64,000 bases of DNA from Perna viridis (lineage: Eukaryota), in NCBI GenBank assembly GCA_037379345.1, contig CM074517.1, positions 40,537,691-40,601,690 on the forward strand, in the 5' to 3' direction. The position numbers and the translations under genes were made by a program. The notes below the pieces were generated by a model. It was not told where the DNA came from and searched no databases. It saw nothing but the letters and a program-made list of their open reading frames with translations. Every line of letters starts with the position of its first letter. The stretch's first letter is position 1. Below are positions 13,880 to 34,200 of this stretch, one piece after another.

Positions 13880-16747
13880 ATGGAGCTACATCCATATTTA
13901 GAAGCAGACACCATTCCAAATCATGATCTCTGGTATGTTTTGTCCACTGTTGGAGATTGCCCTTCAATTCGTGTTGGTCATACTTGTACATACATGAAAG
14001 GAAAATCAGAAAGTGATAATGGAAAGTTATATGTTATTGGTGGGGCTAACCCCAGTGGAGCTTTCTGTGATACTTTCATTCTTGATTTGAATACATGTCA
14101 GTGGGATATAGTTGATTTGCCAGGCTTTAGAGCTCGCTATGAACATGCTGCTTTTATTCCTCCAAGTTCTCATGATAAAATTTTTATATTCGGTGGTGCT
14201 GATAACACAGGCAATATGAATGATATACAAATTTTGGACACCTCCAAAAATACTTGGACAACTGCCAAGGTTTCTGGTACACCCCCAACTCCCAGAACAT
14301 TCCACACAAATTCTTTGGTTGGGGACAAATTCATTGTATACAGTGGAGGACATACTCAAGCAGAACCTGTTCAGGATAGACAAGTGCATTTTTTTGATAC
14401 AGTGACTATGACATGGTCAACCAGAGTTATAAAAGGAGATGCACCCAAACCTCGTCATGGTCATGTAATGGTGCCGGTTGGAGAAAACCTTCTTTATTTA
14501 CATGGAGGAATGGCAAGGTCATCATTTTTTGATGATTTCCATTGCTTTGACCTTACAAAAAATTCATGGTCCCACATTAAGAATAAGAAAGTGTATCCTC
14601 CTGCTAGAGCTGGACATAGTGGAACCTCCGTGGGAGGTATGCTGTTTATTTGTGGTGGAATGAACAGAGATGGGGCACTAGATGATATGTATAGATTTGA
14701 TACAAGTAAGTGACTTAGAAAATAATGAAACTGTATTATTTTTTTTCACTGTTGCTAGTTTTCATGGATTCTGTTAAATGAACACATTTGCAGGTATTAA
14801 CTTTTTATGATATGAATAATAAAATAATAATTGTTTCATAGTGTGTGAAGTCAAATTTGTGGTTTTTAGGGGGTTGTTTTTATTGCGTATTTGTCCATCA
14901 TGGAAAAGAGAAATATTTATTCACTGTGAACATCATTATATATTACCTGTTATGTTTTACATACATGTAGAAGTATTTACACTTGTGAATGCCATTGAAG
15001 AAAATAATATATATTCCCATTGTTTATGTACTGAATTCTCCTTCAACTTAAAGATAAATGATGTCACAATTTAAAATTACATTGTTTCATTGACATCAAA
15101 AGGATATTCGGAAACAACTTTGGGGTCATTTAGAGCAAAATGACAAGTGTGAATTCATATATTGAAGTCATAATACACAACAAAATCTGACTTGCAACTA
15201 ACATGAAAACAAAAAATATTTTCGTCTGCAGTAAGAAAAAGAAGAGGGACCAATAGTACTGAAGAGTATTATGAACTCTGCATTATAGAATTTAATATGC
15301 TTGCTAGAAGCTTACAACATGATTTTGATAGTGATAATTACAAGGTAATTTTAAAAGTGCAATTCATCCCCAAGTATATACTTGTTTTATAATGATGATT
15401 GAATGATTTTAATGTTTACCTTTATTTTTCAACAGCCTGTAAAACTTGGTGTAAGATAGAGTTGGCAGGCCCAGCACCAGCTTGTCGTTTAGACTTTGGC
15501 ATGTGTTCAGTAGAACTTAGCAGAGATGTTCCTCCGTCGAGTAGTGAGAATGGGGATATCTTAGAAACATCCCGCCATGCTCAAGACATGTTAGAACTTG
15601 CCATGAAACCAGGTAGTGCTAGTTCTAGAAGCAGTAGTAATGTAGGAAGTGCCAACTCAAGGGATAGGCAGTTACTTGGAAGTGATAACTCAAGATCTGG
15701 TAGTCGGCAAGTTGGTAGTGCAGGGTCAAGAGAAAGCTTTCATGAATATAATTATGGTTGGTATCATGGTTGAATGGACTGTTGTAGCTATATAATGTTT
15801 CTTTTTTATAAAGTTTTTTCTCCTGTTTTAGCTTATGTTTTTTTTTTTTGTTTTGGTTCGTATAAGTCTATTTAAAAAAAAAAGAATTAAAATAATATTA
15901 TGTGGAATTATATGCGTATTTTCTTTCTACTTGTATAGAAAATAGTATAATGTATCATATTACCCAATATGAAGAACACCGAAAAATAGAACCCCCATAT
16001 ATTTTTAATGGTGAGAATTTTGATCTCTTTGATTTCAGTATATGCTAATGCCTAAAGTAAACATAAAGCTAATGGGCCAAATATTTATTATCAGTATGCT
16101 AACTGCATTAAATAAATATATGCAATTACAACAATCAACAAAAGGAGAGATAACCCCCTAAGTTGGACATATTAAGATGTTCAGCAATAACATTTAAAAC
16201 ACCTGTAACAGCCACCCATTAAATAATACTACTAGGGTTAGAAAGGGTTGGCCCCAACCTGGTTTGAGGGCAAGCAAAATTTGTGTTATGTTTGGCTGCC
16301 ATTTATATCAAGTCATTTCAATATGGTATAGACTATTACCAAAATCAGTTTTATACCTACAAATGTTTGTTATTGTTGTACCTGTGTCTACATTAAACCT
16401 TTAATTAATATCTTGTGTTATTTATAGTATGTACAAAATACATAAAAAACTTGAATCAGAAATACAAAACAGTAATGCAAATAAAAACAATGTCATAAAA
16501 CATTTTCTTCAAATTTGTGTCTTTTTTACTACTAGAGAGCTCCAGTACAGGCAATGATATCCAGACCTTAGAGGAAGGAGATAACCTCTCAGATGAGGAG
16601 GAAACACCAAGAGCAGAGGGTGCCTCCTCAAGTGTATTCCAAGAGTTCATAAAACCAAAACATACAATGAAAATGGTCCTAATACATGGAGGGATGGACA
16701 CAGAAGGAGAAATATTTGATGACACTCTAGTTTATCTGGTAGAATGA
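13880..16747 (+). CDS. RABEPK: Rab9 effector protein with kelch motifs (p40)
   Basis: Exons 13880-14705, 15436-15756 and 16536-16747 join in phase. Kelch repeats (RVGHTC..GGANP, RYEHAA, RTFH, RHGH, RAGH) and C-terminal GGMDTEGEIFDD match RABEPK. Confidence 0.93.
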
Positions 16748-17303: not shown

Positions 17304-20300
17304 TCTTTATTATCATTGACTCCGTAGTGCCTTGTTCATTGTGTAGTCCCAAACAGCTCCACATTCATTGTGTCGCTCTGGTTCGTTGTGTTGGATATCC
17401 AGCATGATTAAATAGATGGAGATGAAATTTATCAAATAAGGGCTGAATTCAATTTGAAATTTGTAAAATTCTAAAATTATTGTGGTATAGTTCAGCACTT
17501 GTATAAACCAAACCTGAATTGTGTATGAGAATAAATTACAAACCTATAAAACAATTAAGCTTCATTTAAAACAAGTGAATTTTGCAAATAAATTAGAATT
17601 TAAAACTGCTAAAATGGTAATGGTAAATTATTTCTGAATTTCCAGAATCATAATTAGACTTGATATAACACCAATATGAACATCTGTTACTGTAAACTGA
17701 TGTTTAACATTATCAATTCAAATTTCTTATTATTTATTTTCGCTACTTACAATCTATCTAGTGGTAAAGGGATCTACATGGGGCAATATATTTTTGTGAA
17801 TTTTTTTCTGCTTGCCAAATCAGAAAGAATAAATTGCATAAAAATAAGTAAGAGATGTTATAAATATATATTGTGAGAGTTTGTAGACTGATGTAAGCTT
17901 TCAAGTTCCAGGTACAATAATGTACATTGTGTTTTTCCTTGCATGTGTTCAATGATTATAGTGGACAATAGTGTACAATGAAAGTTGAATACTCGTAATG
18001 TCATATCATTCCAAAACAAAGCAGCTTGGCTACAATGAACTTTGACCTCATTTTTGTTTTTGTTTTTGTTTTTTTTTGCTATGATTTTATCTTTGCCTTT
18101 TATCTTAGCATTTAGATGAGAGTGTTAGTACTTTTTGTTTGTGAATGTGTGAGGCGATTTGAAATTTTCGGTTTATTTATAACAATTTTTTTAGCCAAGA
18201 TCAAATGAAAGATCTTTTTGTTTGGTGTTAAAATAAAAAGAAGTTAGGCTCTGTCTGAAGGAAAAAAAATCAATCAGAATCATTTCTTCAAGATAAGATT
18301 TTTACCTACCAGTATTTCTTTCTACTAACAATAGAAGGAATTATTTGATACTGTTTATTAAATTTTTAAGTTGAAATATTTCTAAAGTGATTAATAAGAA
18401 GGAGTTAGTAATTGTAGATATTGGCTTTGTTTAGTATCCAATACTTTTTGCACTATGTAGCTATTAAAATAATTCAGTTATAATGCAGTGCATAGGATAA
18501 ATATGTATCATTTTAAGTACCATTCTATGTAAGAATCAGGCAATGGGTGGCACATCATTGCTGTCTGTGACATAGATATTTTTTACCACCATTTAACAGT
18601 AGACTAGTGCGTTTCAACTAAATTTGACCTATCAATATCTTAAAAAGACAAACGTTACAAACACTGATGACTATTTTTGGAAGTTATGAGGTATAAATAC
18701 TTGGACTATACAATAAAATCTCTGTATTTGTTTTTTTTTTTCATGTGCCATCTCTCGCACACATTTTGCCCGATTTGTAGATAGAAAGACACTTAAAAAT
18801 GAATGAACTGCTTGATTGTTTGTCTCATGTTTGTGTTACACATTGTTGTATTGTCAAATGACTTACAGACTTTTAGTGGTAGCTGTGAACATGTGCTTAC
18901 TTGAATTTGTGTGGTAAGCCTGTTAGGAACAGCTTGTAGTAATCAAAAGACCTTTTCAGTGTAGATTTTTTACTCTATTTTTTTTTTTTTTTTGTTCCAT
19001 ATCGTATTAATAGTTTTTCTTTTACTATACATCAATCAAAACCTATTATGTTCTTTTGTTTTATATCATGCCAACAAAAATTGCTTCAACAAGATCTTAA
19101 ATTGTCCTGTTTCTTGTAAGGCTAAAATAAAAATATGTGTGTTTACTGTAAAATTTGAATTTCCAGAAATTTTGTCCCGGATCTGTAACCCAACAAAATA
19201 TTATTGTACAAAATGGTGATCTCGGGTGGTTCAAAAAATCAATAATAAAATCAACCATATTTTTAGCAGGTGACAGTAAACATACATATTTTATTTTTTG
19301 GCCTAACCTTGACTGCCTTATGGACTCCATGATGAAAAAATATAATCTGCCCCAAAATATGTCCTCATTGAAAGAAATGCATGTACCAGTATCAATTTAC
19401 TAATTTCATATCTGTTAACCTTTTGAATGCTCAGAGAGGGAGATCTCCTTCTTTTCAGCTTTTGGAAGAGGGAGAATTAGCATGACAAACTTTTTTGCAG
19501 AAAAGGATAATTTTGCTAGAAATGGAAGTAAAAAGATGAGACAAAGATATAAAATCTTTGATAATCTTGTTAATCTACTAAGGATTTCTAATCAAAATCT
19601 GAGTAATTAGTACAACAAAAGGATTAATTATTTGTTATTTCTCAATGAATATTATGTTACATTTACATTACATTCCAGTGGCGGATCCATAAAAAATTTG
19701 GGGATGGTCCTAAATGAATGTCATTTTCCGAGAAATGCTTTGTATGCTGGTCATGTGCACAGACCATGTGCAATTATTAAAGACACCTGTAATAGATTGT
19801 CTAGTCACTCTAAGAGCTGTAATTTTACGAAGGTAGACATATGAGGCCAACATATCCTTCTGATCAAAAACACTGAGGGACCCTATACGTAGAAACAAGT
19901 GATACAAATTTATTTATTTATTTATGGTTTGGAATGAAAAAGTTCTGAAGAAGCAAGGATTGTTAAAGTCTACTTTAGACACCCCCGGTAAAAATTGGTA
20001 TTTCTGCTCATTGTTGAGTTAAGGTTTGCTAGCCAAAGTACCAGCACCATATTTAGCAGTGGTTGTTCAGATGGTTTTGACAGTCAAATACTAGGTAAAC
20101 CATATTGATCTCTATGCTGCCAATTTGACACCTCGGGATCAAGTATTACTATGAAAGATTAATTAAATAATTACGACTGCACTATGAGAAAATAACACCA
20201 TGAAAAAATGAGGTTCGACAAGGGGGTGATCTAGTGCAGTGTTGGACCACCCCCTGGATCTCCCACTGTATTCATATAAATTTTATAAGCCATTTAGAAC

Positions 20301-20939
20301 ACATTTTATGTAACATTTCTGCTAAGTGGGAGATTTTGGGGACACAAATTTGTGAAAGAGGGAGATTAGTGTCTCCCATGTGGAAGACTTTCTCAAAGAC
20401 AGAGATTGACCCTAAATGAGGGAGGGTTAAAAGTATGTTTGATTTTGGAAAGAAAACGCCAGCTGAATCAGAGAATTATTATACCCCCACTCAATGTGTG
20501 GAAGGTATATTGGAATCACCTTGACTGTCCATTATTACGTCAGTCTGTTCGTCCAAATATTTGTTGCTATTATCTTGGCTGCAGATTCATGGATTTCAAA
20601 TTTGATGTTTGGCTTCATATGGATAGAGCATATATTGTAAGTAATTTTGGTTAGTTTTTGTTCTCAACTTTCTGTAAAAGTGGGTATGCATAGCATGACA
20701 ATTTGTGCAACTTCATGGTTTGTACAGTTGCAAATCATAGAGTACGGTTTTAGGGTTGGGCCCCCCTTTTTTTATTAAAAAAAAGTTTATTTTGTACCAA
20801 ATTGGGGCAAAAATGAGCAAATGATAGCTTGGAATCTCCATTTTTATGAATTTCTCAATTTGCTCCTGTTCTAAAGGCCTAATTTTGGATTCAAAAGAGT
20901 TAAAATACAAAAATCTATTTAGTGCATAGTTTTCTATCA

Positions 20940-23900
20940 TCAGTCTTCAAAGTGAACACCATTTCTATCCTCTCTTTGTTCAGAACTTTCTATTGAATCA
21001 TCCAGTGAATCGCTGTGATACGAGTCTTCTGATTCATACTGAGGCTCTTCATCACATCCTGTAAATGCTATCAAACTCTCTGGGTTTGATTTAAGACTTT
21101 TGATCATTCGCTTTAGCTCATCTTTGGTAAATTTTAATGCATTTGTATCTGATTCCATTAGAATGTTTTGTTTTTGCAGAAAAAAGTTTGGAAAAAAGTT
21201 TGCTTGTAGCTGCTTTTGTATTGTCTTCAGTACCCCTATCAACCAGTCTTGTCTCAGATGGAGTTTTCCAAGACTTTGTCTGTACTGAAAAAATATGGCA
21301 TGATTTATTACTCGGTTCGTAATTGTATGAAGACAAAACACATGTGCTTCCTTTAAAGCATTTATAAGAATTATCAGATCCTCAAATGTTTTGTTAGGTC
21401 TCAAATTGTTGAGAAAAGCAAATGCTCTATCTTCAATTTGCCCTATGTGAACACCCCAAGTAATTTCAATACTTGGACTACAACGCCTTTCCCTTGACCA
21501 CCTTTCCAGTCTGGCCTCTAAAAACAGAATTTCATCCCCTGACTTAATTTCATTTTGAATGCCATGTAAAAACTTTGATTGGTCCTCATTATGGGGTCTC
21601 CTGCTAGGAATTGGTGCTATTAAGTTAACTTGTCTTGGAACTTCATTCAGTGGAATACAAGGGACAAGGTTTATCTTGTAGTTTTCTTGTGGGTCTAGTC
21701 CAATTATATGGGTCCAAACTGTTCCATCACTGGCCAAGCTGGTCTCTAGATAGGCATATTGCTGTGTTCTTTTGTTTTCTACCTCCATACTCTCACAGGC
21801 TTTGGATAATCCTTGAAAACAGTACAGTGAAAGTTATGTTTAAGCTAGATATATGCATCTTTATGATACATTATGCTGGGAAGTTAGTAAAGATAGGCTG
21901 ATTGTAACCCAAATGTTAAAGTAAAAGACATAAAAATTACATAATTTGTTATATCAAGAATGAAGAAGAAACAAATTTTGGCCTCAAGGTAAGGTTAAAG
22001 TTCACCAGCTGTCTCCCTACTTAACTCAGTATCAAAAACCTAATCTTATAAAAAAAAAAAAAACAAACAAAAACAAAAAAAAACCAAATATTTTACAAGT
22101 GGGACATAATTTGTCCCATAAACCGTAAACCAACTGTTACAAACGGACAGACTGACTGGTCATTTGTATAACCACTTGAGGTATTGGTTTCTTAAAAGTT
22201 TTACGTCCACTATAGTTGCTATATGCTATTATTGTTTATTTTCACGACCTTGGCCGTTATGATGCTGGTTTTATCTGATTTACTTAACAACTAAGCTACG
22301 GTAATCATTGCTTCGGGTCTTTTTACAAATGGCAGACTGTCGATAACAATGGTTATTTGCTGCATTTATCTGACTTAAGAATGTTAGTACAGTTGTACTA
22401 CATATTGGTAAATAGGCAACAAATCTAGTAGCCGTCATTTTGTTGTTAATGATGTTATGTGTGATCGCTGAGGGAGATGTCCCGTTGATTTTTATTGAGA
22501 TAAATATATATCCAATTAAAACAAGTACTATCTTTGAAAAAAAGATAGCCGACGCAGTAAAATTTTGTTCTTTTTTACTTCTAAGTTTCTACATTTCTTT
22601 CAAGAAAATAACACATCGCACGCAATTTTTAAGATTCCAATTAAGTTTTCTTCGAACGCAATTCCAAAATTTCGATACAGATTCTTCGAACGCAATTCCA
22701 AAATTTCGATACAGATTCTTCGAACGCCACTAAGTTATCAGTATTTGGCCAATCTGGGAAACGAATTGCGATCAGGTGACTTTGTGTTTCCATATAAGAG
22801 CGTCCTTGAGGTTAAAGGGTAAAAAGCGAAGCTATACCGACTGCGTCGGAAAAAGAACCAAAACTGAATAAAAATCAGTATCTGACTGGCGTTAGCTATT
22901 TACATTTAGCGAAAAATAGGTAAACAGGCAACGAATCTAGTAGCTGTCAAGCTAATTGTTAATGATGTTATGGGTGATCGCTGAGGGAGATGTCCCGTTG
23001 ATTTTTTTAGATGAATATATATCCAATTGAAAAGAGAACCAAATCTGAAAAAAAATCAGTATCTGACTGGCGTACGCTTAAATTTTTTTTACAAAACGAA
23101 AAATTCGGGCCAAGAAAATATCCGGGATAACTTGAACAATATCTACCCACCGTACCCACATTTAAGTATGGTTACAGCCTGTAATGTTTTAAATTTCGAC
23201 TGGATTTTAAAATAACATATTTTAACTTTTACAGTATCCAAATCTAAATTGCGATCTTAGCAAAACATATGACTCACCTTTGTTAAACCAACATAATACA
23301 AACTCTGGTCTAAGGTAGCCATCGGAATCCATACAGTACCCCCAGTCGTTGACTACATTCAGCTTCTCTTCTTTAGTCAGCTTGTCATTTACTTGGACTA
23401 GTATTCTATGAGCTGGCAGGTCTCCTAAAGACCTATACACAATCTGCAGTAAATAAGCTTTCGTACCTATAGTTGCCGTGCCGATGAGGCTAAATACTAG
23501 TAAAAGAGCTTATATATGTACACCCAATGAACGATGCACTTAGTAAAAAAAAACAATACTTATCTCAAATATGAAAGAAATTGCATCTTTAATATGTATA
23601 ACTAATACAAAGTCATAGGAGCGAAACTAATTCTACACAGACGGACGTACAGACATGCAGTCGTTGAGTTGCATTTCCATTGCTCGGCAATCGAGAGATG
23701 TGATATACATGTACTATAATAAACATACACAAATCTTAGCGCTTGTCTATCTATTAAGCGGAATATGCAGAACTTTAGATCGATCGTTGCATCACCGAAT
23801 GATTCTAACAAAAGTGTCGCGAAAAAGAAAAGAAAACCGAGCTAATCAGAGTCATGTAATGCTTTGAATTGGAATGGAAACTATGTCATACCTTACAAAA

Positions 23901-24253
23901 AAAAAAACTTGTCTTAAGCTTACCCGAAAGGAGTTCATCCGAACTGGTTTTCGTAAAGGCACCAAACCTACGTAGACATTTTTATCAACAGCTCTGAAAT
24001 CGACTATTTCAGGAGTCTCTTCTGTATTCCTGACGTACTTCGGGTATAACCATTCACTATCAAAAGCGGCTTCAATAATATTAGTAGCCAGATATAAGGC
24101 GGATTTATATGCTTTTTCTTTGATCTGGGTCACAGATGCTCTTTTATCCTTTAGAACTTTTTGAATGTAGTCATCTAGTTGGGGTTCAGGACTTTTTGAT
24201 CGGTTGTTTCCGTCAATGTCCGACAGATCAAAATCTTCTTCTAACCAGGACAT
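20940..24253 (-). CDS. Mab-21/cGAS-like (cGLR-fold) nucleotidyltransferase-domain protein, catalytic motifs degenerate; at least 455 aa, 5' end uncertain
   Basis: Exon A 24253-23924 (ends CGG|GTAAGC, phase 0), exon B 23443-23278 (TTTACTGCAG| acceptor, ends AAAG|GTGAGT, phase 1) and exon C 21811-20940 (TTTTCAAG| acceptor, phase 1) join into one ORF. Mab-21-like motifs: DGYLRPEFVLCWF, INLVPCI, WGVHIGQIE, LQANFFPNFFLQKQNIL. The frame stays open upstream to about 24345; a candidate short first exon ATG AAG TGC CG|GTAAGA lies near 24760-24772. Confidence 0.8.
22648..22727. repeat. 34-bp tandem repeat, 2.3 copies
   Basis: ttcttcgaacgcaattccaaaatttcgatacaga at 22648, 22682 and 22716. Confidence 0.9.
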
Positions 24254-27200
24254 GGTATCTGGCGGTTTCCGGTAGCTGTACTTCGGGGTAAGGTAGCCAC
24301 TGCTCCTTACATGACTGTAGTTAGGACGACTTACAGGTGCTGACTTTTGAACAAAAGAATAAATATTGCTTTATTATGTTTCTTTTTACATGGTAAACTT
24401 AAATCTTATGAGACTTATTATGTTTTCTTGTAACAACCATTTATAATTTTTGATCAAATCGTTACTTATGCCTTTACTCCAAAGATTGAAAACCGGAATT
24501 TTCATATGACTATCCACTACAAGTGGAAAGTATGTGTCTACCACGCACATTACTCTTCCCATTCTCTTATCGCTAATGCAGTTTGTTTTGCTTGGATTAT
24601 AACCAACTAATAAAGTAAACTAATAGGTAACAACTGCGCGGAGCTCATAGATAACTGTTTTTGTGGATTGACGTCTTCGTTATCATAGATTATCAAAATA
24701 AGCTTTATATGAAAGAAGAAAGTATCACTATGTCTTTATGAAAGAAAAATGATAATCTTACCGGCACTTCATTGGAATCCTAGCTTAATCAACACTTCTA
24801 AACGACTTTCGATTTTCAGTTACGTAAATCAATCATTCAGTTTGCTTAAAACATATTCAATAGTGTAAAGATCAAACACTTACCATTTTAATAATATGGA
24901 CCTAAATTCTAATCAATTTGTTCATTAATATACGGTCTAGAAGTAAAGAAATAAACATGTTAGAATGGAAGACTCATAAGGATAGGGTATCTAAGATCAC
25001 TGGGTCATATAATATGAAAACAATACCCTAAATTAGTGCCAGAATGAACAAGACGGGTAATACGATATAATTAAAAACAATTAGAGGTAAACATTTACAA
25101 ACTGAGCACATTATTGTCTACACAAGTCGATTGTAGGTTGTGATTTAAAGAACTTTAGGTCTGGTATTCGGTAAAATGTTAATGTGGTCGTAAGGGGTGG
25201 GTTTTAAATCAGTTCCATCTTGATTTAGGGTTTATGGTCCACTGCATGGCCGAATATGTTAAAAAGTCAAATTATCAGAATCAATGGGGGGGGGGGGGGG
25301 GCGGGACGTACACACTCCAAACATAATCTTGTTAAGTCATAGGTAAGGCAGTGTAAAAAACAGCGGACCCCAAAATTTTCAAGGTTGGGGGAGGGGGGAC
25401 TTAGGGTCAAATTTTGTGTTTAAATATGCATCAAATTCAATAATGTTGATAATACAATGCTCAATAACAAATATGCTTATTCGTGTCATTTTTCTGTGAA
25501 CCGTGTTACTTTCTGAGTATTTTCAATGGTTTCACATAAAAAAATATCACAATTAGAAAATTTTGAAAATGCTCTCATTGATTCGTCTCTTGGAGTATGT
25601 GCCCCATTTGACTTCAAATCCTGCCAATATCTCTATTTTCACATCAAATTTCGGACTTACAATCAATTTTAAGAAATTTGATAACAGGTGTTTCTCAATT
25701 CAAAATCCAGTGACAATTCGTGCAATATTTAAACTTTAAAGATGAACAGAAGGAACGCAGCATAATACGACCGCAACATGTTGAACTCCGTTCATTTAGG
25801 GCAAGTGTGGACACAATATGTGTTTGGCACACTTAAGCATATGGTCTTACACTTCAGTATAAACACGACAACTGGTTTGGATACCATAAAGCATAAAATT
25901 TGAATTTAAGGGTTCTAATCAAGAACCTTTGCCTTCGATCCCGTAAGAAATGTAAATCTGCCAAAAGAATGTAAGCAGGAATTTTCATAAGGAATCCAAT
26001 GATCAGACCAAAATAAAAAAAAGTTGGGTGTGGTCCAATTTTGTACCTCTTTAACTCCAAAGCAGTTAAAAATATGTCTACCATGATAAACTTTTAAAAG
26101 AGAATTCCAAAGGAACACATTGACATCTGAATCATCAAAATAAGATTACCAATAAATTTTTTCGAACAATCATAATGAAAACACCTATTTTCAAAAAGGG
26201 ATCGAAACCCTAAAGATACAGAACCAGTACCGTGTCCCTAGGAACATTGCGCAGACGACGACAGGATGATACCAATTAACATCTGCAAATTGTTTTGCAA
26301 TTGTATAAAAAAAAAAATGAATCTGAACTTCTCATTAATATGCACAATCATCGTTTGTAGTTTTAATTTGCTATATTCTTTTTCATGAGATTCAGCTCAG
26401 AAGTTTTAAAGGAAAATAAAAAAGTGAAATTGCACGCATTTTCATGCTACGCATACCGCCACTCGTACAGGAAGCCGATATCCGAGAGTAACAACAATCC
26501 TTAACAATATACGGCCAATTTATATGAAGCCACACACCAAATTTGAAATCAATCCACCCGTAAAGTCAAACAATACAGGAAGTTGATATCAGACGGCACA
26601 CAAAATTTCTGACGACATCTGGGCTAACTATATAAAGCCAAACATCAAATTCAAAATTAATCCTTCCATTGGGAGCCGAGATTTTGTGATAAAAATTTTC
26701 CCTATCATTCCATATAGTGAAAATGGCAAAGTCCAATGAAACAGGAAGTTGATATTAGACATCACACAATTTGTCACTGTATATATATATTACTATTAAG
26801 GTTGAATGGCAACAGGTGTAATTATTATTATGTCTTCCCATCCCCAGATGGGGGAAATTACTTAAGTGTGAATTCTTGTTCTCCTCATATAAAAGATTGT
26901 CCAGGCCATAATATTTTCGTCATATTTTGTATGTAGGTAATATGGAGACATGGTGCCTACAAAAGTTTGTGCCCTTCGACCTTAAGGGCAAATAAATGAT
27001 AGTTTAAGCCTATTACTTGACCGATTTTAACTTCTTTATCTTTTGACACAAGCTTTTCATATTTGGCATGTCAATGGGACATATGAAGATGTGTAGCCTA
27101 TCAAATTTGGTGACCTTTGACCTTGACTATTAACCTCAAGGTTAAATAATTGATTTTTTAAGCCAATTTCTTCTCTGGGTCATAACTTTTTCATCTTTTA

Positions 27201-31200: not shown

Positions 31201-34200
31201 TGACCTCTTGTAAACCTTTTCAAAAAGCTTTTCTTTTTTTAATGAAAACAAAAATGCCTATTTGTTTTCATGGTTCCAGAATTGAACAATTCATCCTTTT
31301 GCTTGTACATTGTATAAATTTTTGCTATTTCAAAAACATATGTTTCAACAATTACCTGTGAACAACTGTGTGTGTCAGACCATTGTACACACTCATATCA
31401 GGACAAAATGCTATAAATTTTATGACAAAATAAAAATCCAGTGTCATATTGAATGTTTCTTGACTAAATTTGGTGTCCTACAAATTTAGTGGATACTATT
31501 GTGGATATTATTAATTCATTACAAGTTTATTTTTGTTTTCTCAAGATTTATAATATCTGATCTTGAGGTATCAGAAATTGAGGGCCCAGGTCCTAGCATC
31601 ACTGCTAATTTGAACTCCTGCAGGAATTTCACAACTAATGATGACTAGCAGAGGCTGATCAAGAGATTATCAAAAGAGGAGCTTCTTTGTCGTGGTTCAG
31701 TGATTTCCTATATAATCAACTCAATTTTTCTGATAAGGATTGGGGCTTGGTACCCCTTGGTTCACCTATGACGATGTATCTGTACAATGTATTGACTTAC
31801 CTATTGGTAACATTGGCACATTCTCACAGTAAACTCTTGGACAGTAACCAAAATCACCTTGTTGCCATTTTTCAATCTGAAAGAAAATTTGTCTTCTCAA
31901 ATAAAAGCCGTGTTGTTGTAATCATTTTTATGTAACCTTTTGTCAACATTCTTTATGATGTAAATGTTTCCAGGATGTCTCATTTGCCAGTGGCAGAATC
32001 AGAAAGAGATTTGATGGGTGGTTTTCAAGTGAAGTTCAACGTTACCTTCAATTTGTCCCATTTGTTTCACCCCCAAATCCATACAAAAGTCGAGTTCCAA
32101 CTGATGCTGTGGTTAGTGTCAGCATGGTGAATGAGAGTCTTTGAGCTCTATGACCACGTAGATGCAAGTTTTGAATATTAAACTTTCACATTTAACAAAA
32201 GAAGACAGAATTTCACTATTAACAACTTCTGCACTGTTTGACAAAGTAATACATGATGCCATCATTAAAATTATCACACAAAGACAGTAAAGCATCCCTT
32301 TTCTAAAAACTTTATGTTTTTTTCCCTTTTCTGTATTTCCAGATATATTTTATAAGTGGCCATGTGCATGGACCATGTGTAATTATCAGTTACTGTGTTT
32401 TTTTTTATAATGACATTATCTGATCAGAATAAGAAGCAGAAACTGCAAAAGCAGTAACTTTGAGGATTTAATATTTGAGTCCAGCATCTCTTTCTCACAA
32501 ATTGCAAGAATACTGACATGTTCTCTTGTGCCCCATACCTAGGATAATCAAAAAATTGAAAATTCATATCTGGGACGGAATGAAATTATTTTCTAGAAGC
32601 AAGGATTTTATAGTAGGTAAAAGTTGGCATTTCTGTTAATCACCAAGTTGCAGTTTACATGCAAAATTATTTCGAATTCAGAAACAGCTACAGACCACAA
32701 AACATGTCTTCAATAGAGCATCATTCTGTTGTTGCTTATTTGAGATAAAAAATATTTTGTGTATAAAAATGGCATCTTTTCAAGAGTTATCATTCTTGAT
32801 TTGGTCTGATTTGTTTGATTTTCAATGGGTGATAAATGAACGATTTTATCAAAAATACAGATCTAATGTTACATAAAATATAGTATAAGTAGGCTGAAAA
32901 AAGGTGCCATTTTTTCTTGTGGCTTTTCTACACCATGAATCACCTCTATCATATTTTATACAGAAAGGTACTTAAAAATAATTTATATCTTTTTTTACAA
33001 TTTTTATTATCAACTCTTAATAATAATATCACTCCAGAGTTACAGCAATCATTACTATTACTTACTACAAGCATTCAACCATTTGAGCAATACCTCTGTT
33101 TAGATATATCTAGTATGGATTAACTTGTACAATATTTCTGACCATTACTCACCATCTGATCGATGCCTCTGTTTGTCATGATATATCTAGCATGGATTAA
33201 CTAGTACAATATTTCTGACCATTACTCACCATCTGAGCGATGCCTCTGTTTGTCATGATATATCTAGCATGGATTAACTAGTACAATATTTCTGACCATT
33301 ACTCACCATCTGAGCGATGCCTCTGTTTGTCATGATATATCTAGCATGGATTAACTAGTACAATATTTCTGACCATTACTCACCATCTGAGCGATGCCTC
33401 TGTTTGTCATGATATATCTAGCATGGATTAACTAGTACAATATATCTGACCATTACTCACCATCTGAGCGATGCCTCTGTTTGTCATGATATATCTAGCA
33501 TGGATTAACTAGTACAATATATCTGACCATTACTCACCATCTGAGCGATGCCTCTGTTTGTCATGATATATCTAGCATGGATTAACTAGTACAATATTTC
33601 TGACCATTACTCACCATCTGAGCGATGCCTCTGTTTGTCATGATATATCTAGCATGGATTAACTAGTACAATATTTCTGACCATTACTCACCATCTGAGC
33701 GATGCCTCTGTTTGTCATGATATATCTAGCATGGATTAACCCGTACAACATTTCTGCAGCTTGTTCTATTAAATCACTTTGATTGGGATTGTCTTCAAGT
33801 TCATCATCTACAGGTGAAAGCAAAATTTTACACATTTACCAACCAGTCTATTAGTTATAAAATTAGCATTAATGACAATACTATGTTATGGTCATATCTC
33901 CAATTTGAACCAAATAATGCTGTTACAAGTAGCTTGCATCTAGCAAATCAAATCTAAGCAAGTTATATCCTACCTGGTTATGTCATTGAGGATTACCAAG
34001 AGTTGATTGGTAGAAAGGTCAGAAAGTTCACCCCTTAATCATTAAAAAATGAAAGTTAATATTAATTTAAGCCGCATTTAAAAATCCGAAATTGATACAC
34101 CTGACCCGGATTTAAATACAAAATTTCTCTAGCCATATTAATTTCTACTTACTTTTGATTGCTGAGTGTGACCAATAGCATAAATGATGTATTTTATAAA

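What the first reader, a model, noticed from the sequence alone, without database searches (positions are those of the whole stretch)
20940..24345. Hidden cGAS-like (Mab-21 fold) gene that looks like an intact pseudoenzyme
Seen: three ORF-track fragments (23852-24253, 23222-23440, 20940-21788) join through canonical, phase-matched splice sites into one uninterrupted protein of at least 455 aa. Structural Mab-21 motifs are kept (GYLxP..V..WF, xLVPCI, W....E, FPNFF...NIL). Known: active cGAS/cGLR enzymes need the G[G/S]...[E/D]h[E/D] motif and a third Asp in the DLVP strand. By eye, the first motif reads ...IVDFRAVDKNVYVGLVPL (no GS, no EFD) and the third Asp is Asn (INLVP). Inference: a maintained, catalytically dead cGLR. 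It could be a nucleotide or ligand sensor, a decoy or dominant-negative regulator of cGLR-STING signalling, or a scaffold analogous to MiD49/51.
Basis: partly seen in the sequence, partly recalled or inferred. Interest (0 to 1): 0.8.

Follow-up and report, generated by a model that had tools for sequence, protein, structure and literature searches.

The report
Catalytically dead cGAS-like mussel gene
A real, spliced and expressed mussel gene encodes a protein with the full cGAS/Mab-21 fold that has lost every residue needed for catalysis; all bivalves keep it under strong selection, so it most likely acts by binding something.

Summary
The three minus-strand ORF pieces join at exactly the predicted GT-AG sites. 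RNA contigs from three studies carry those joins, and a DNA run does not. The RNA also shows a fourth, 5' exon that ends in the true start codon (24886-24884). The product is therefore 487 aa, not 455. Mytilus edulis has the same four-exon layout.

The protein falls below Pfam's Mab-21 cut-offs and has no sequence hit in the PDB. An AlphaFold model of the 65-74% identical M. edulis orthologue (pLDDT 85.6) nevertheless superposes on human MAB21L1 (Z 31.9), a coral cGLR (28.9), human cGAS (27.9) and MiD51 (26.3). The window's own last exon, folded alone, gives the same hit list.

- **Catalytic residues:** profile alignments to canonical cGLRs of the same genome put Asn at the third catalytic Asp with high confidence. 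The strand that should carry the acidic pair has no acidic residue in any register, and there is no G[GS] loop.
- **Conservation:** the family occurs in 1-2 copies across bivalves, its tree follows the species tree, and pN/pS is about 0.23-0.28 with synonymous sites saturated.

This is a maintained, non-catalytic Mab-21 protein and not a cGLR in the strict sense. Its function is inferred only. This scan holds no earlier finding of it on other DNA.

The parts
24884..24956 (-). Exon 0 (minimum extent): 5' UTR ending in the start codon ATG at 24886-24884, followed by donor GTAAGT
   Evidence: RNA contigs X5 record 16 and X8 record 20 join 24884 to 24346. An in-frame TAG lies upstream at 24904-24902. 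The M. edulis first exon also ends in ATG followed by GTAAGT.
24347..24883 (-). Intron 0. It starts GT but ends AA (24348-24347); a canonical AG lies 3 nt further on, also in frame.
   Evidence: Unexplained; see the notebook entry.
23924..24346 (-). Exon 1 (141 codons): conserved N-terminal extension, acidic N-terminal segment, spine helix and the first strands of the NTase lobe
   Evidence: 72-74% identical to M. edulis P0001.
23969..23980 (-). Codons for N-V-Y-V, the strand that carries [DE]h[DE] in active cGLRs; no acidic residue
   Evidence: hhalign in two registers. This is strand E127-134 of the model. Canonical paralogues of the same genome have EFD here.
23444..23923 (-). Intron 1 (GTAAGC...CAG)
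23278..23443 (-). Exon 2 (55 codons plus 1 base): strands and helices of the NTase lobe, including the family motif LRPxxVLxWFN
21812..23277 (-). Intron 2 (GTGAGT...AAG), holding a duplication of about 512 nt and a very high-copy repeat at about 22519-22854
   Evidence: (DNA word depth about 46,000 in 22461-22854).
20940..21811 (-). Exon 3: rest of the NTase lobe, the C-terminal helical lobe (Mab-21_C), an acidic Ser-rich tail and the stop codon at 20942-20940
   Evidence: Pfam Mab-21_C 18.6 bits. AF2 model of this piece alone: pLDDT 79.9. Its 50 best listed Foldseek matches are all Mab-21-family structures.
21669..21671 (-). AAC codon: Asn at the position of the third catalytic Asp (I-N-L-V-P against I-D-L-[AV]-P in canonical paralogues)
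   Evidence: hhalign confidence 0.8-0.9. In the family alignment this column is Asn in all rows that cover it except two with Ser (P0012, P0018), and never Asp or Glu.
19934..20939 (-). 3' UTR (minimum extent)
   Evidence: RNA contig X8 record 20 runs continuously from 19934 to 21810.

Best explanation
A four-exon, minus-strand, expressed gene (transcript at least 24956-19934) encodes a soluble 487-aa protein with the complete bilobal cGAS/Mab-21 architecture: spine helix, nucleotidyltransferase lobe and helical lobe. The G[GS] activation loop, both acidic residues of the metal-binding strand and the third catalytic Asp are all replaced, so it cannot make a nucleotide signal by the cGAS mechanism. 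It belongs to a bivalve-wide, low-copy orthologous family that has kept this dead configuration under strong purifying selection.

Shown here: gene structure, expression, fold, loss of the catalytic motif, conservation.

Inferred: it works without catalysis, using the retained cleft or surface of the Mab-21 cage to bind a partner (a protein, or possibly a nucleotide as MiD51 and MAB21L1 do). The disordered acidic Ser-rich N- and C-terminal tails could serve as regulatory or interaction segments. Its stable copy number points to a conserved cellular or developmental role. I put about 55% on that, about 25% on regulation of cGLR-STING or kinase signalling, and leave the rest open.
For: - **Gene model and expression:** splice joins appear in RNA contigs of three studies and are absent from DNA. 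Exon-by-exon collinearity with M. edulis P0001 is 74/64/66%, with identical intron positions including the exon that ends in ATG.
- **Fold:** the AF2 model of orthologue P0001 has pLDDT 85.6 and pTM 0.82. VIA-align gives Z 31.9, rmsd 2.7 A over 334 residues to MAB21L1, Z 28.9 to Sp-cGLR1, 27.9 to human cGAS and 26.3 to MiD51. Foldseek gives E 3e-16. The window's exon-3 product alone folds at pLDDT 79.9 with the same hit list.
- **Homology:** hhalign of the family against canonical Mab-21 proteins of the same genome gives probability 95.4%, E 1.9e-8 and 92.8% with a 10-sequence profile. phmmer links P0001 to P0029 at E 1.4e-11, and P0029 passes both Pfam cut-offs. A profile search of the PDB returns almost only Mab-21 proteins. 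27 of 30 ESM Atlas neighbours are Mab-21 clusters.
- **Dead site:** Asn stands at the third Asp. The second strand is N-V-Y-V. No G[SG]x8-20[DE]x[DE] occurs in the core of any family member, whereas the 10 canonical paralogues whose full-length frames were extracted from the same genome keep G[SG]...EFD; the four of them in alignment A4 keep D at the third site.
- **Selection and conservation:** pN 0.197 against pS 0.870 versus M. edulis, and 0.233 against 0.828 versus a third mytilid mRNA. Orthologues occur in Pinctada, Pecten, Crassostrea, Potamilus and Mactra. The tree follows bivalve phylogeny. The gene is single-copy in its own genome.
- **Solubility:** no membrane-spanning segment; the maximum 19-residue hydropathy is 1.49, inside a core helix.
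Against: - No biochemical evidence of any kind exists, and no partner or ligand is known.
- The full-length fold was predicted for the M. edulis orthologue, because the window's exons were not joined. Only exon 3 of the window was folded directly.
- The register of the second strand is uncertain by one residue (hhalign confidence 0.3-0.4) and the G[GS] region aligns poorly (0.1-0.2). 'No acidic dyad' therefore rests on the strand having no acidic residue at all, not on a fixed residue-to-residue map.
- Contigs cannot give expression level, tissue or induction, so an immune role is not excluded.
- Heteroconch and unionid members carry one Asp at the first position of that strand.
Confidence: 0.8

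Rival explanations
1. An immune regulator: a dead cGLR that acts as a decoy, dominant-negative or adaptor in cGLR-STING or IKK/TBK1 signalling. It would bind the nucleic acid, the cyclic dinucleotide or the kinase without making a signal. This is one of the first reader's options.
For: The genome holds at least 37 canonical Mab-21/cGLR matches, so there is a pathway to regulate. The fold is shared with cGLRs at Z 27-29. Shrimp Mab21 proteins that make no cGAMP activate IKK-epsilon by direct binding (PMC12928593), which is a precedent for non-catalytic Mab-21 immune signalling.
Against: Immune cGLRs in bivalves occur as large lineage-specific expansions (PMC9980059). This gene is present in 1-2 copies, with a tree that mirrors the species tree over the whole class and strong purifying selection. 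The best structural match is the developmental protein MAB21L1. RNA contigs carry it in the runs of at least five studies; their sampling conditions are coded and unknown to me.
Confidence: 0.2
2. A still active nucleotidyltransferase that uses non-canonical catalytic residues.
For: The cage and cleft are intact at high model confidence. Conserved polar residues exist near the core, for example the H-R pair in exon 2 and the D-G-T turn. Heteroconch members keep one Asp at the start of the second strand.
Against: All three carboxylates and the G[GS] loop are missing in the window and in every pteriomorph member. Two-metal catalysis in this fold needs them, and PMC9980059 reports that mutating the motif abolishes synthesis in four cGLRs.
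Confidence: 0.04
3. A decaying pseudogene, or a chance chain of ORFs.
For: Pfam scores are below the cut-offs and no sequence hit exists in the PDB.
Against: The frame is intact over 487 codons. Spliced RNA is seen in three studies. pN/pS is about 0.23-0.28 with saturated pS. Intact orthologues span Bivalvia. The model is confident and matches the Mab-21 fold.
Confidence: 0.01

Closest known systems
MAB21L1 / MAB21L2 (human MAB21L1, PDB 5eog and 5eom)
   Same: Best structural match: Z 31.9, rmsd 2.7 A, 334 of 348 residues. Both are soluble, have no G[GS] loop and lack an acidic residue at the third catalytic position (Gln in the mussel's own MAB21L orthologue L004, Asn here). Both are low-copy and strongly conserved.
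   Different: Not an orthologue. The same genome has a true MAB21L gene (L004, E 9.5e-201 to 5eog), whereas this family has no phmmer hit in the PDB at all. MAB21L keeps the E-F-E pair on the second strand; here it is N-V-Y-V. This family adds disordered acidic N- and C-terminal tails.
cGAS-like receptors (cGLRs) as defined by Li et al. 2023 (PMC9980059), e.g. Sp-cGLR1 (PDB 8gjy), Tc-cGLR (7lt2), cGAS
   Same: Same bilobal cage over both lobes: Z 28.9 and 27.9, hhalign probability 95% over 316 columns. Shared C-terminal lobe motifs, including the P-x-[FY]-F...N-[LI]-[FL] helix end.
   Different: The defining active-site motif is absent. The family is not expanded. No zinc-thumb motif was seen in the sequence by eye; this was not tested.
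MiD49 / MiD51 (MIEF2 / MIEF1)
   Same: A catalytically inert Mab-21 fold used as a receptor or scaffold; Z 26.3.
   Different: MiD49 and MiD51 are anchored in the mitochondrial outer membrane by an N-terminal transmembrane helix (my own knowledge). This protein has no hydrophobic segment. No specific sequence relationship was found: profile E 0.07-0.1, C-terminal lobe only.
Shrimp LvMab21-1/2/3 (PMC12928593)
   Same: Invertebrate Mab-21 proteins reported to signal without binding nucleic acid or making cGAMP, through protein-protein contact with IKK-epsilon. This is a functional precedent.
   Different: No sequence comparison was made here. The shrimp proteins are immune-linked; nothing links the mussel gene to immunity yet.

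Membership tests
Mab-21 / cGAS superfamily (Pfam PF03281 + PF20266) | Sequence match to the Pfam Mab-21 and Mab-21_C models above the gathering score (24.1 bits) | tested here: not met
   Window exon 3: Mab-21_C 18.6 bits. Orthologue P0001: Mab-21 17.6 bits and Mab-21_C 16.2 bits, collinear but both below the cut-off. The six-frame Pfam scan of the whole genome lists at least 37 Mab-21 matches, and this gene is not among them.
Mab-21 / cGAS superfamily (Pfam PF03281 + PF20266) | Homology shown by profile or transitive search | tested here: met
   hhalign probability 95.4%, E 1.9e-8 over 316 columns to canonical members of the same genome. phmmer E 1.4e-11 to P0029, which passes both Pfam cut-offs. 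Profile hits in the PDB are nearly all Mab-21 proteins.
Mab-21 / cGAS superfamily (Pfam PF03281 + PF20266) | Bilobal fold: spine helix, NTase alpha/beta lobe and helical lobe | tested here: met
   AF2 pLDDT 85.6 and pTM 0.82 for the orthologue. Z 31.9, 28.9, 27.9 and 26.3 to MAB21L1, cGLR, cGAS and MiD51, covering model residues about 47-454. The window's exon-3 model gives the same families.
cGLR (Li et al. 2023, PMC9980059) | Active-site motif h[QT]GS x8-20 [DE]h[DE]h x50-90 h[DE]h | tested here: not met
   No regex match in the window's exons or in the core of any family member. The aligned positions read T-P or E-A for GS, N-V-Y-V for the dyad strand and Asn for the third acid.
cGLR (Li et al. 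2023, PMC9980059) | Homology across both the NTase core and the C-terminal helix bundle | tested here: met
   The hhalign alignment spans query residues 79-426.
cGLR (Li et al. 2023, PMC9980059) | [quoted passage not shown] | tested here: met
   Z 28.9 to Sp-cGLR1 (8gjy) and Z 27.9 to human cGAS.
cGLR (Li et al. 2023, PMC9980059) | Ligand-activated synthesis of a nucleotide second messenger | not testable with these tools
   Needs recombinant protein and NTP assays.
MAB21L1/2 orthogroup | High sequence identity to vertebrate MAB21L1 | tested here: not met
   P0001 has no PDB hit at E <= 10. The genome's real orthologue L004 scores E 9.5e-201 to 5eog.
MiD49 / MiD51 | N-terminal transmembrane anchor | tested here: not met
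   The maximum 19-residue Kyte-Doolittle mean in exon 1 is 0.63. The N-terminal 55 residues of the model are disordered and polar.
MiD49 / MiD51 | ADP/GDP-binding pocket residues | not tested
   No residue-level structural alignment or model coordinates were available.

The most novel reading that the evidence does not exclude
A class-wide, single-copy 'pseudo-cGLR' of bivalves acts as a fixed hub or brake for their greatly expanded cGLR-STING network. It would do this by sequestering a cyclic dinucleotide or by docking a TBK1/IKK-type kinase, as the shrimp Mab21 proteins do. That would be a conserved non-catalytic component of invertebrate nucleotide immunity.
Probability: 0.12. Interest if true: 0.65.

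Novelty: new member of a known kind. Interest (0 to 1): 0.38.

Why it matters
Bivalves hold the largest known cGLR repertoires, and surveys of that family keep only proteins with an intact active site. This gene shows what such filters and Pfam cut-offs leave out: an old, well-conserved, expressed Mab-21 protein that cannot be an enzyme. It adds a lophotrochozoan example to the short list of non-catalytic Mab-21 proteins (MAB21L1-3, MiD49/51). It is a tractable single-copy candidate for asking what the cGAS cage does when it is not making a signal. It is also a practical annotation point, since every orthologue in public databases is labelled 'uncharacterized' or 'hypothetical'.

Tried and rejected
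- **Pfam, exon by exon:** gave only one sub-threshold Mab-21_C hit.
- **phmmer of the orthologue against PDB sequences:** found nothing.
- **Word-based protein search with exon 3:** found only four close mytilid relatives, so the exhaustive search was used.
- **tblastx of the M. edulis flanks against the window:** found no shared neighbours, so synteny is neither supported nor refuted.
- **Rfam scan of the whole window:** found nothing.
- **Jukes-Cantor dS:** could not be computed because pS exceeds 0.75. pN/pS is therefore reported as an upper bound on omega.
- **Model coordinates:** not available to scripts, so the triad could not be mapped in 3D. I used two hhalign profiles plus the model's strand order instead.
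- **Joined protein:** Full-length steps used the natural orthologue P0001, and codon counts were summed per exon.
- **Pseudogene reading:** rejected.
- **MAB21L orthology:** rejected.
- **MiD-type membrane anchoring:** rejected.
Full report
**Observation**

Reading the sequence:
- Exon 1 ends at 23924 before GTAAGC.
- Exon 2 is 23443-23278, between a CAG acceptor and a GTGAGT donor.
- Exon 3 starts at 21811 after an AAG acceptor and runs to the stop at 20942-20940.
- The lengths are 330, 166 and 872 nt, with a Gly codon split across the last junction.

**Transcripts**

Fourteen runs guessed to be RNA hold 37-46% of the sampled words of the stretch. The coding exons are about 40% of the stretch, which fits spliced RNA.

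I laid three of those runs, from three studies, and one DNA run on 19900-25800.
- Each RNA run has a single contig lying on ...-21810, 23277-23443 and 23924-..., with nothing between the pieces.
- The DNA run is collinear through the introns. The predicted junctions are therefore real and RNA-specific.

Two of the RNA contigs continue from 24346 to 24884-24956. This is a fourth, 5' exon.
- Its last three bases are an ATG in an AAAATG context, followed by GTAAGT, and in frame with the ORF. An in-frame TAG lies upstream.
- The annotated Mytilus edulis gene has the same arrangement: a first exon ending in ATG followed by GTAAGT, then an acceptor. Its N-terminal 34 residues align with the window's open frame upstream of 24253.
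- The likely product is therefore 487 aa.
- The 3' UTR reaches at least 19934.

One oddity remains. The intron-0 acceptor used in the contigs is preceded by AA and not AG. A canonical AG lies 3 nt downstream and is also in frame (note).

**Orthology and selection**

The three exon translations align end to end with M. edulis protein P0001 at 74, 64 and 66% identity. The exon ends fall at the same residues and the intron positions are the same in the M. edulis genome.

An exhaustive phmmer search with P0001 against 1.84 billion cluster representatives found only 49 proteins.
- The full-length ones come from Pinctada (two), Pecten, Crassostrea, Potamilus and Mactra. All are named 'uncharacterized' or 'hypothetical'.
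- A maximum-likelihood tree puts the window with the mytilids (100/100). It separates pteriomorphs from unionid plus heterodont members, as the species tree does.
- The window's genome (723 Mb) has one copy.

Codon counts were made exon by exon and then summed. They give pN 0.197 and pS 0.870 against M. edulis, and 0.233 and 0.828 against a third mytilid mRNA. Synonymous sites are saturated, so omega is well below 0.25. This is not a decaying gene.

**Fold**

Sequence tools alone barely detect the family.
- Pfam gives 16-19 bits for Mab-21 and Mab-21_C against a cut-off of 24.1.
- There is no phmmer hit in the PDB.
- The six-frame Pfam scan of the genome lists at least 37 Mab-21 matches, and this gene is not among them.

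Deeper methods agree with one another.
- A family profile finds almost only Mab-21 proteins in the PDB.
- ESM Atlas neighbours are Mab-21 clusters.
- phmmer links P0001 at E 1.4e-11 to an Owenia protein that passes both Pfam cut-offs.
- hhalign against canonical Mab-21 proteins of the same genome gives probability 95.4% over 316 columns.

The window's exons may not be joined, so I folded the natural orthologue P0001 with a 30-sequence alignment. The result was pLDDT 85.6 and pTM 0.82, with block-mean pLDDT mostly above 90 (lowest blocks 82-89) between residues 61 and 450.

| Match | VIA-align Z |
|---|---|
| Human MAB21L1 (rmsd 2.7 A, 334 of 348 residues) | 31.9 |
| Coral Sp-cGLR1 | 28.9 |
| Human cGAS 161-522 | 27.9 |
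| MiD51 | 26.3 |

These values are; Foldseek gives E 3e-16. The window's own exon-3 product, folded alone, gives pLDDT 79.9, the same order of helices and strands, and only Mab-21-family structures among the 50 best listed matches.

**Catalytic site**

Li et al. (PMC9980059) define cGLRs by the motif h[QT]GS x8-20 [DE]h[DE]h x50-90 h[DE]h. Of the ten canonical paralogues extracted from this genome, nine carry GS and one GG, each followed by EFD. The four of them in alignment A4 also keep Asp at the third site (I-D-L-[AV]-P, or V-D-I-V-L in L012).

In the gene under study:
- **Third acid:** it aligns to Asn (I-N-L-V-P; codon 21671-21669) with hhalign confidence 0.8-0.9, in two independent profiles.
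- **Second strand:** it reads N-V-Y-V-G-L-V-P (strand E127-134 of the model). The two profiles differ by one residue in register, at confidence 0.3-0.4. No Asp or Glu lies in the strand at all, so the dyad is absent in either register.
- **G[GS] motif:** none exists in the core of any family member. The segment that should form the first strand and loop is coil in the model.
- **Family-wide:** the third position is Asn in all rows that cover it except two with Ser, and never acidic.

**What it is not**

- It is not the MAB21L orthologue. The genome has one (L004, E 9.5e-201 to 5eog).
- It has no membrane anchor, so it is not MiD-like in topology.
- It fails the first cGLR criterion, so I file it as a Mab-21-fold pseudoenzyme and not as a cGLR.

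**How it probably works (inference)**

The cage is kept at high confidence, and several family-specific motifs are strongly conserved. These include L-R-P-x-x-V-L-x-W-F-N, the D-G-T turn, P-I-P-x-R-R-P-Y and the P-x-F-F...N-L-L helix end. Meanwhile the chemistry is gone. That pattern fits a binding role, either for a protein partner or for a nucleotide held without turnover as in MiD51 and MAB21L1.

The first 55 or so residues and the last 30 or so are disordered, acidic and Ser-rich. They could be regulatory.

Low copy number, a species-tree-like phylogeny and strong constraint contrast with the expanded canonical cGLRs (PMC9980059). This makes a conserved cellular or developmental role more likely than a decoy in an arms race. 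The shrimp Mab21-IKK-epsilon precedent (PMC12928593) keeps an immune adaptor role open.

**Novelty and score**

Non-catalytic Mab-21 proteins are known, so this is a new member of a known kind. It is a bivalve-wide orthogroup that standard domain cut-offs miss. Interest is moderate.

**Limits**

- Contigs give presence, not expression level.

Noticed in passing
window 24344-24348 and 24882-24886 (minus strand): The intron-0 acceptor used in two RNA contigs is preceded by AA, not AG. A canonical AG lies 3 nt downstream and is also in frame. M. edulis has CAG at the homologous site. This is either a GT-AA intron or a polymorphic NAGNAG-type tandem acceptor.
   Followed up: partly
window 22404-23078, inside intron 2: A duplication of about 512 nt (88-90% identical blocks) is interrupted by a very high-copy element at about 22519-22854. 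DNA word depth there is about 46,000 against about 30 around it, and the element is also abundant in RNA runs. It includes a perfect 34-nt tandem pair at 22648-22715. No Rfam family matches.
   Followed up: partly
window 13880-14713 (+), with a further open frame at 15399-15773 (+): A large exon encodes a Kelch beta-propeller (Pfam Kelch_KLHDC2_KLHL20_DRC7, 204.5 bits). This is a neighbouring gene on the opposite strand, about 4 kb beyond the end of the Mab-21-like 3' UTR.
   Followed up: partly
G000 C9:35376705-35396379 (L005, L006) and other contigs: The same genome has at least 37 Pfam Mab-21 matches. They include a small cluster on C9 with one copy broken by two stops (L006) and many open frames of 850-950 aa in which the cGLR domain follows a long N-terminal region. 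Ten extracted frames keep G[SG]...[DN]EFD.
   Followed up: partly
relatives P0012, P0014, P0017, P0018 (N-terminal 40 residues): Unionid and heterodont members share an acidic D-D-R-W-x-x-F motif near the N-terminus. From memory this resembles the WxxF-acidic motifs that bind the AP-2 appendage. Pteriomorph members, including the window, have S-W-[LM]-[ED]-[ED]-D instead. This is a lead only.
   Followed up: no
window 917-53404 and 33050-33807 (earlier notes s1-753548 and s1-753478): Other first-stage notes on this window propose a proto-MHC-like gene block containing this cGAS-like gene, and a CK2-beta exon-end minisatellite. I tested neither.
   Followed up: no
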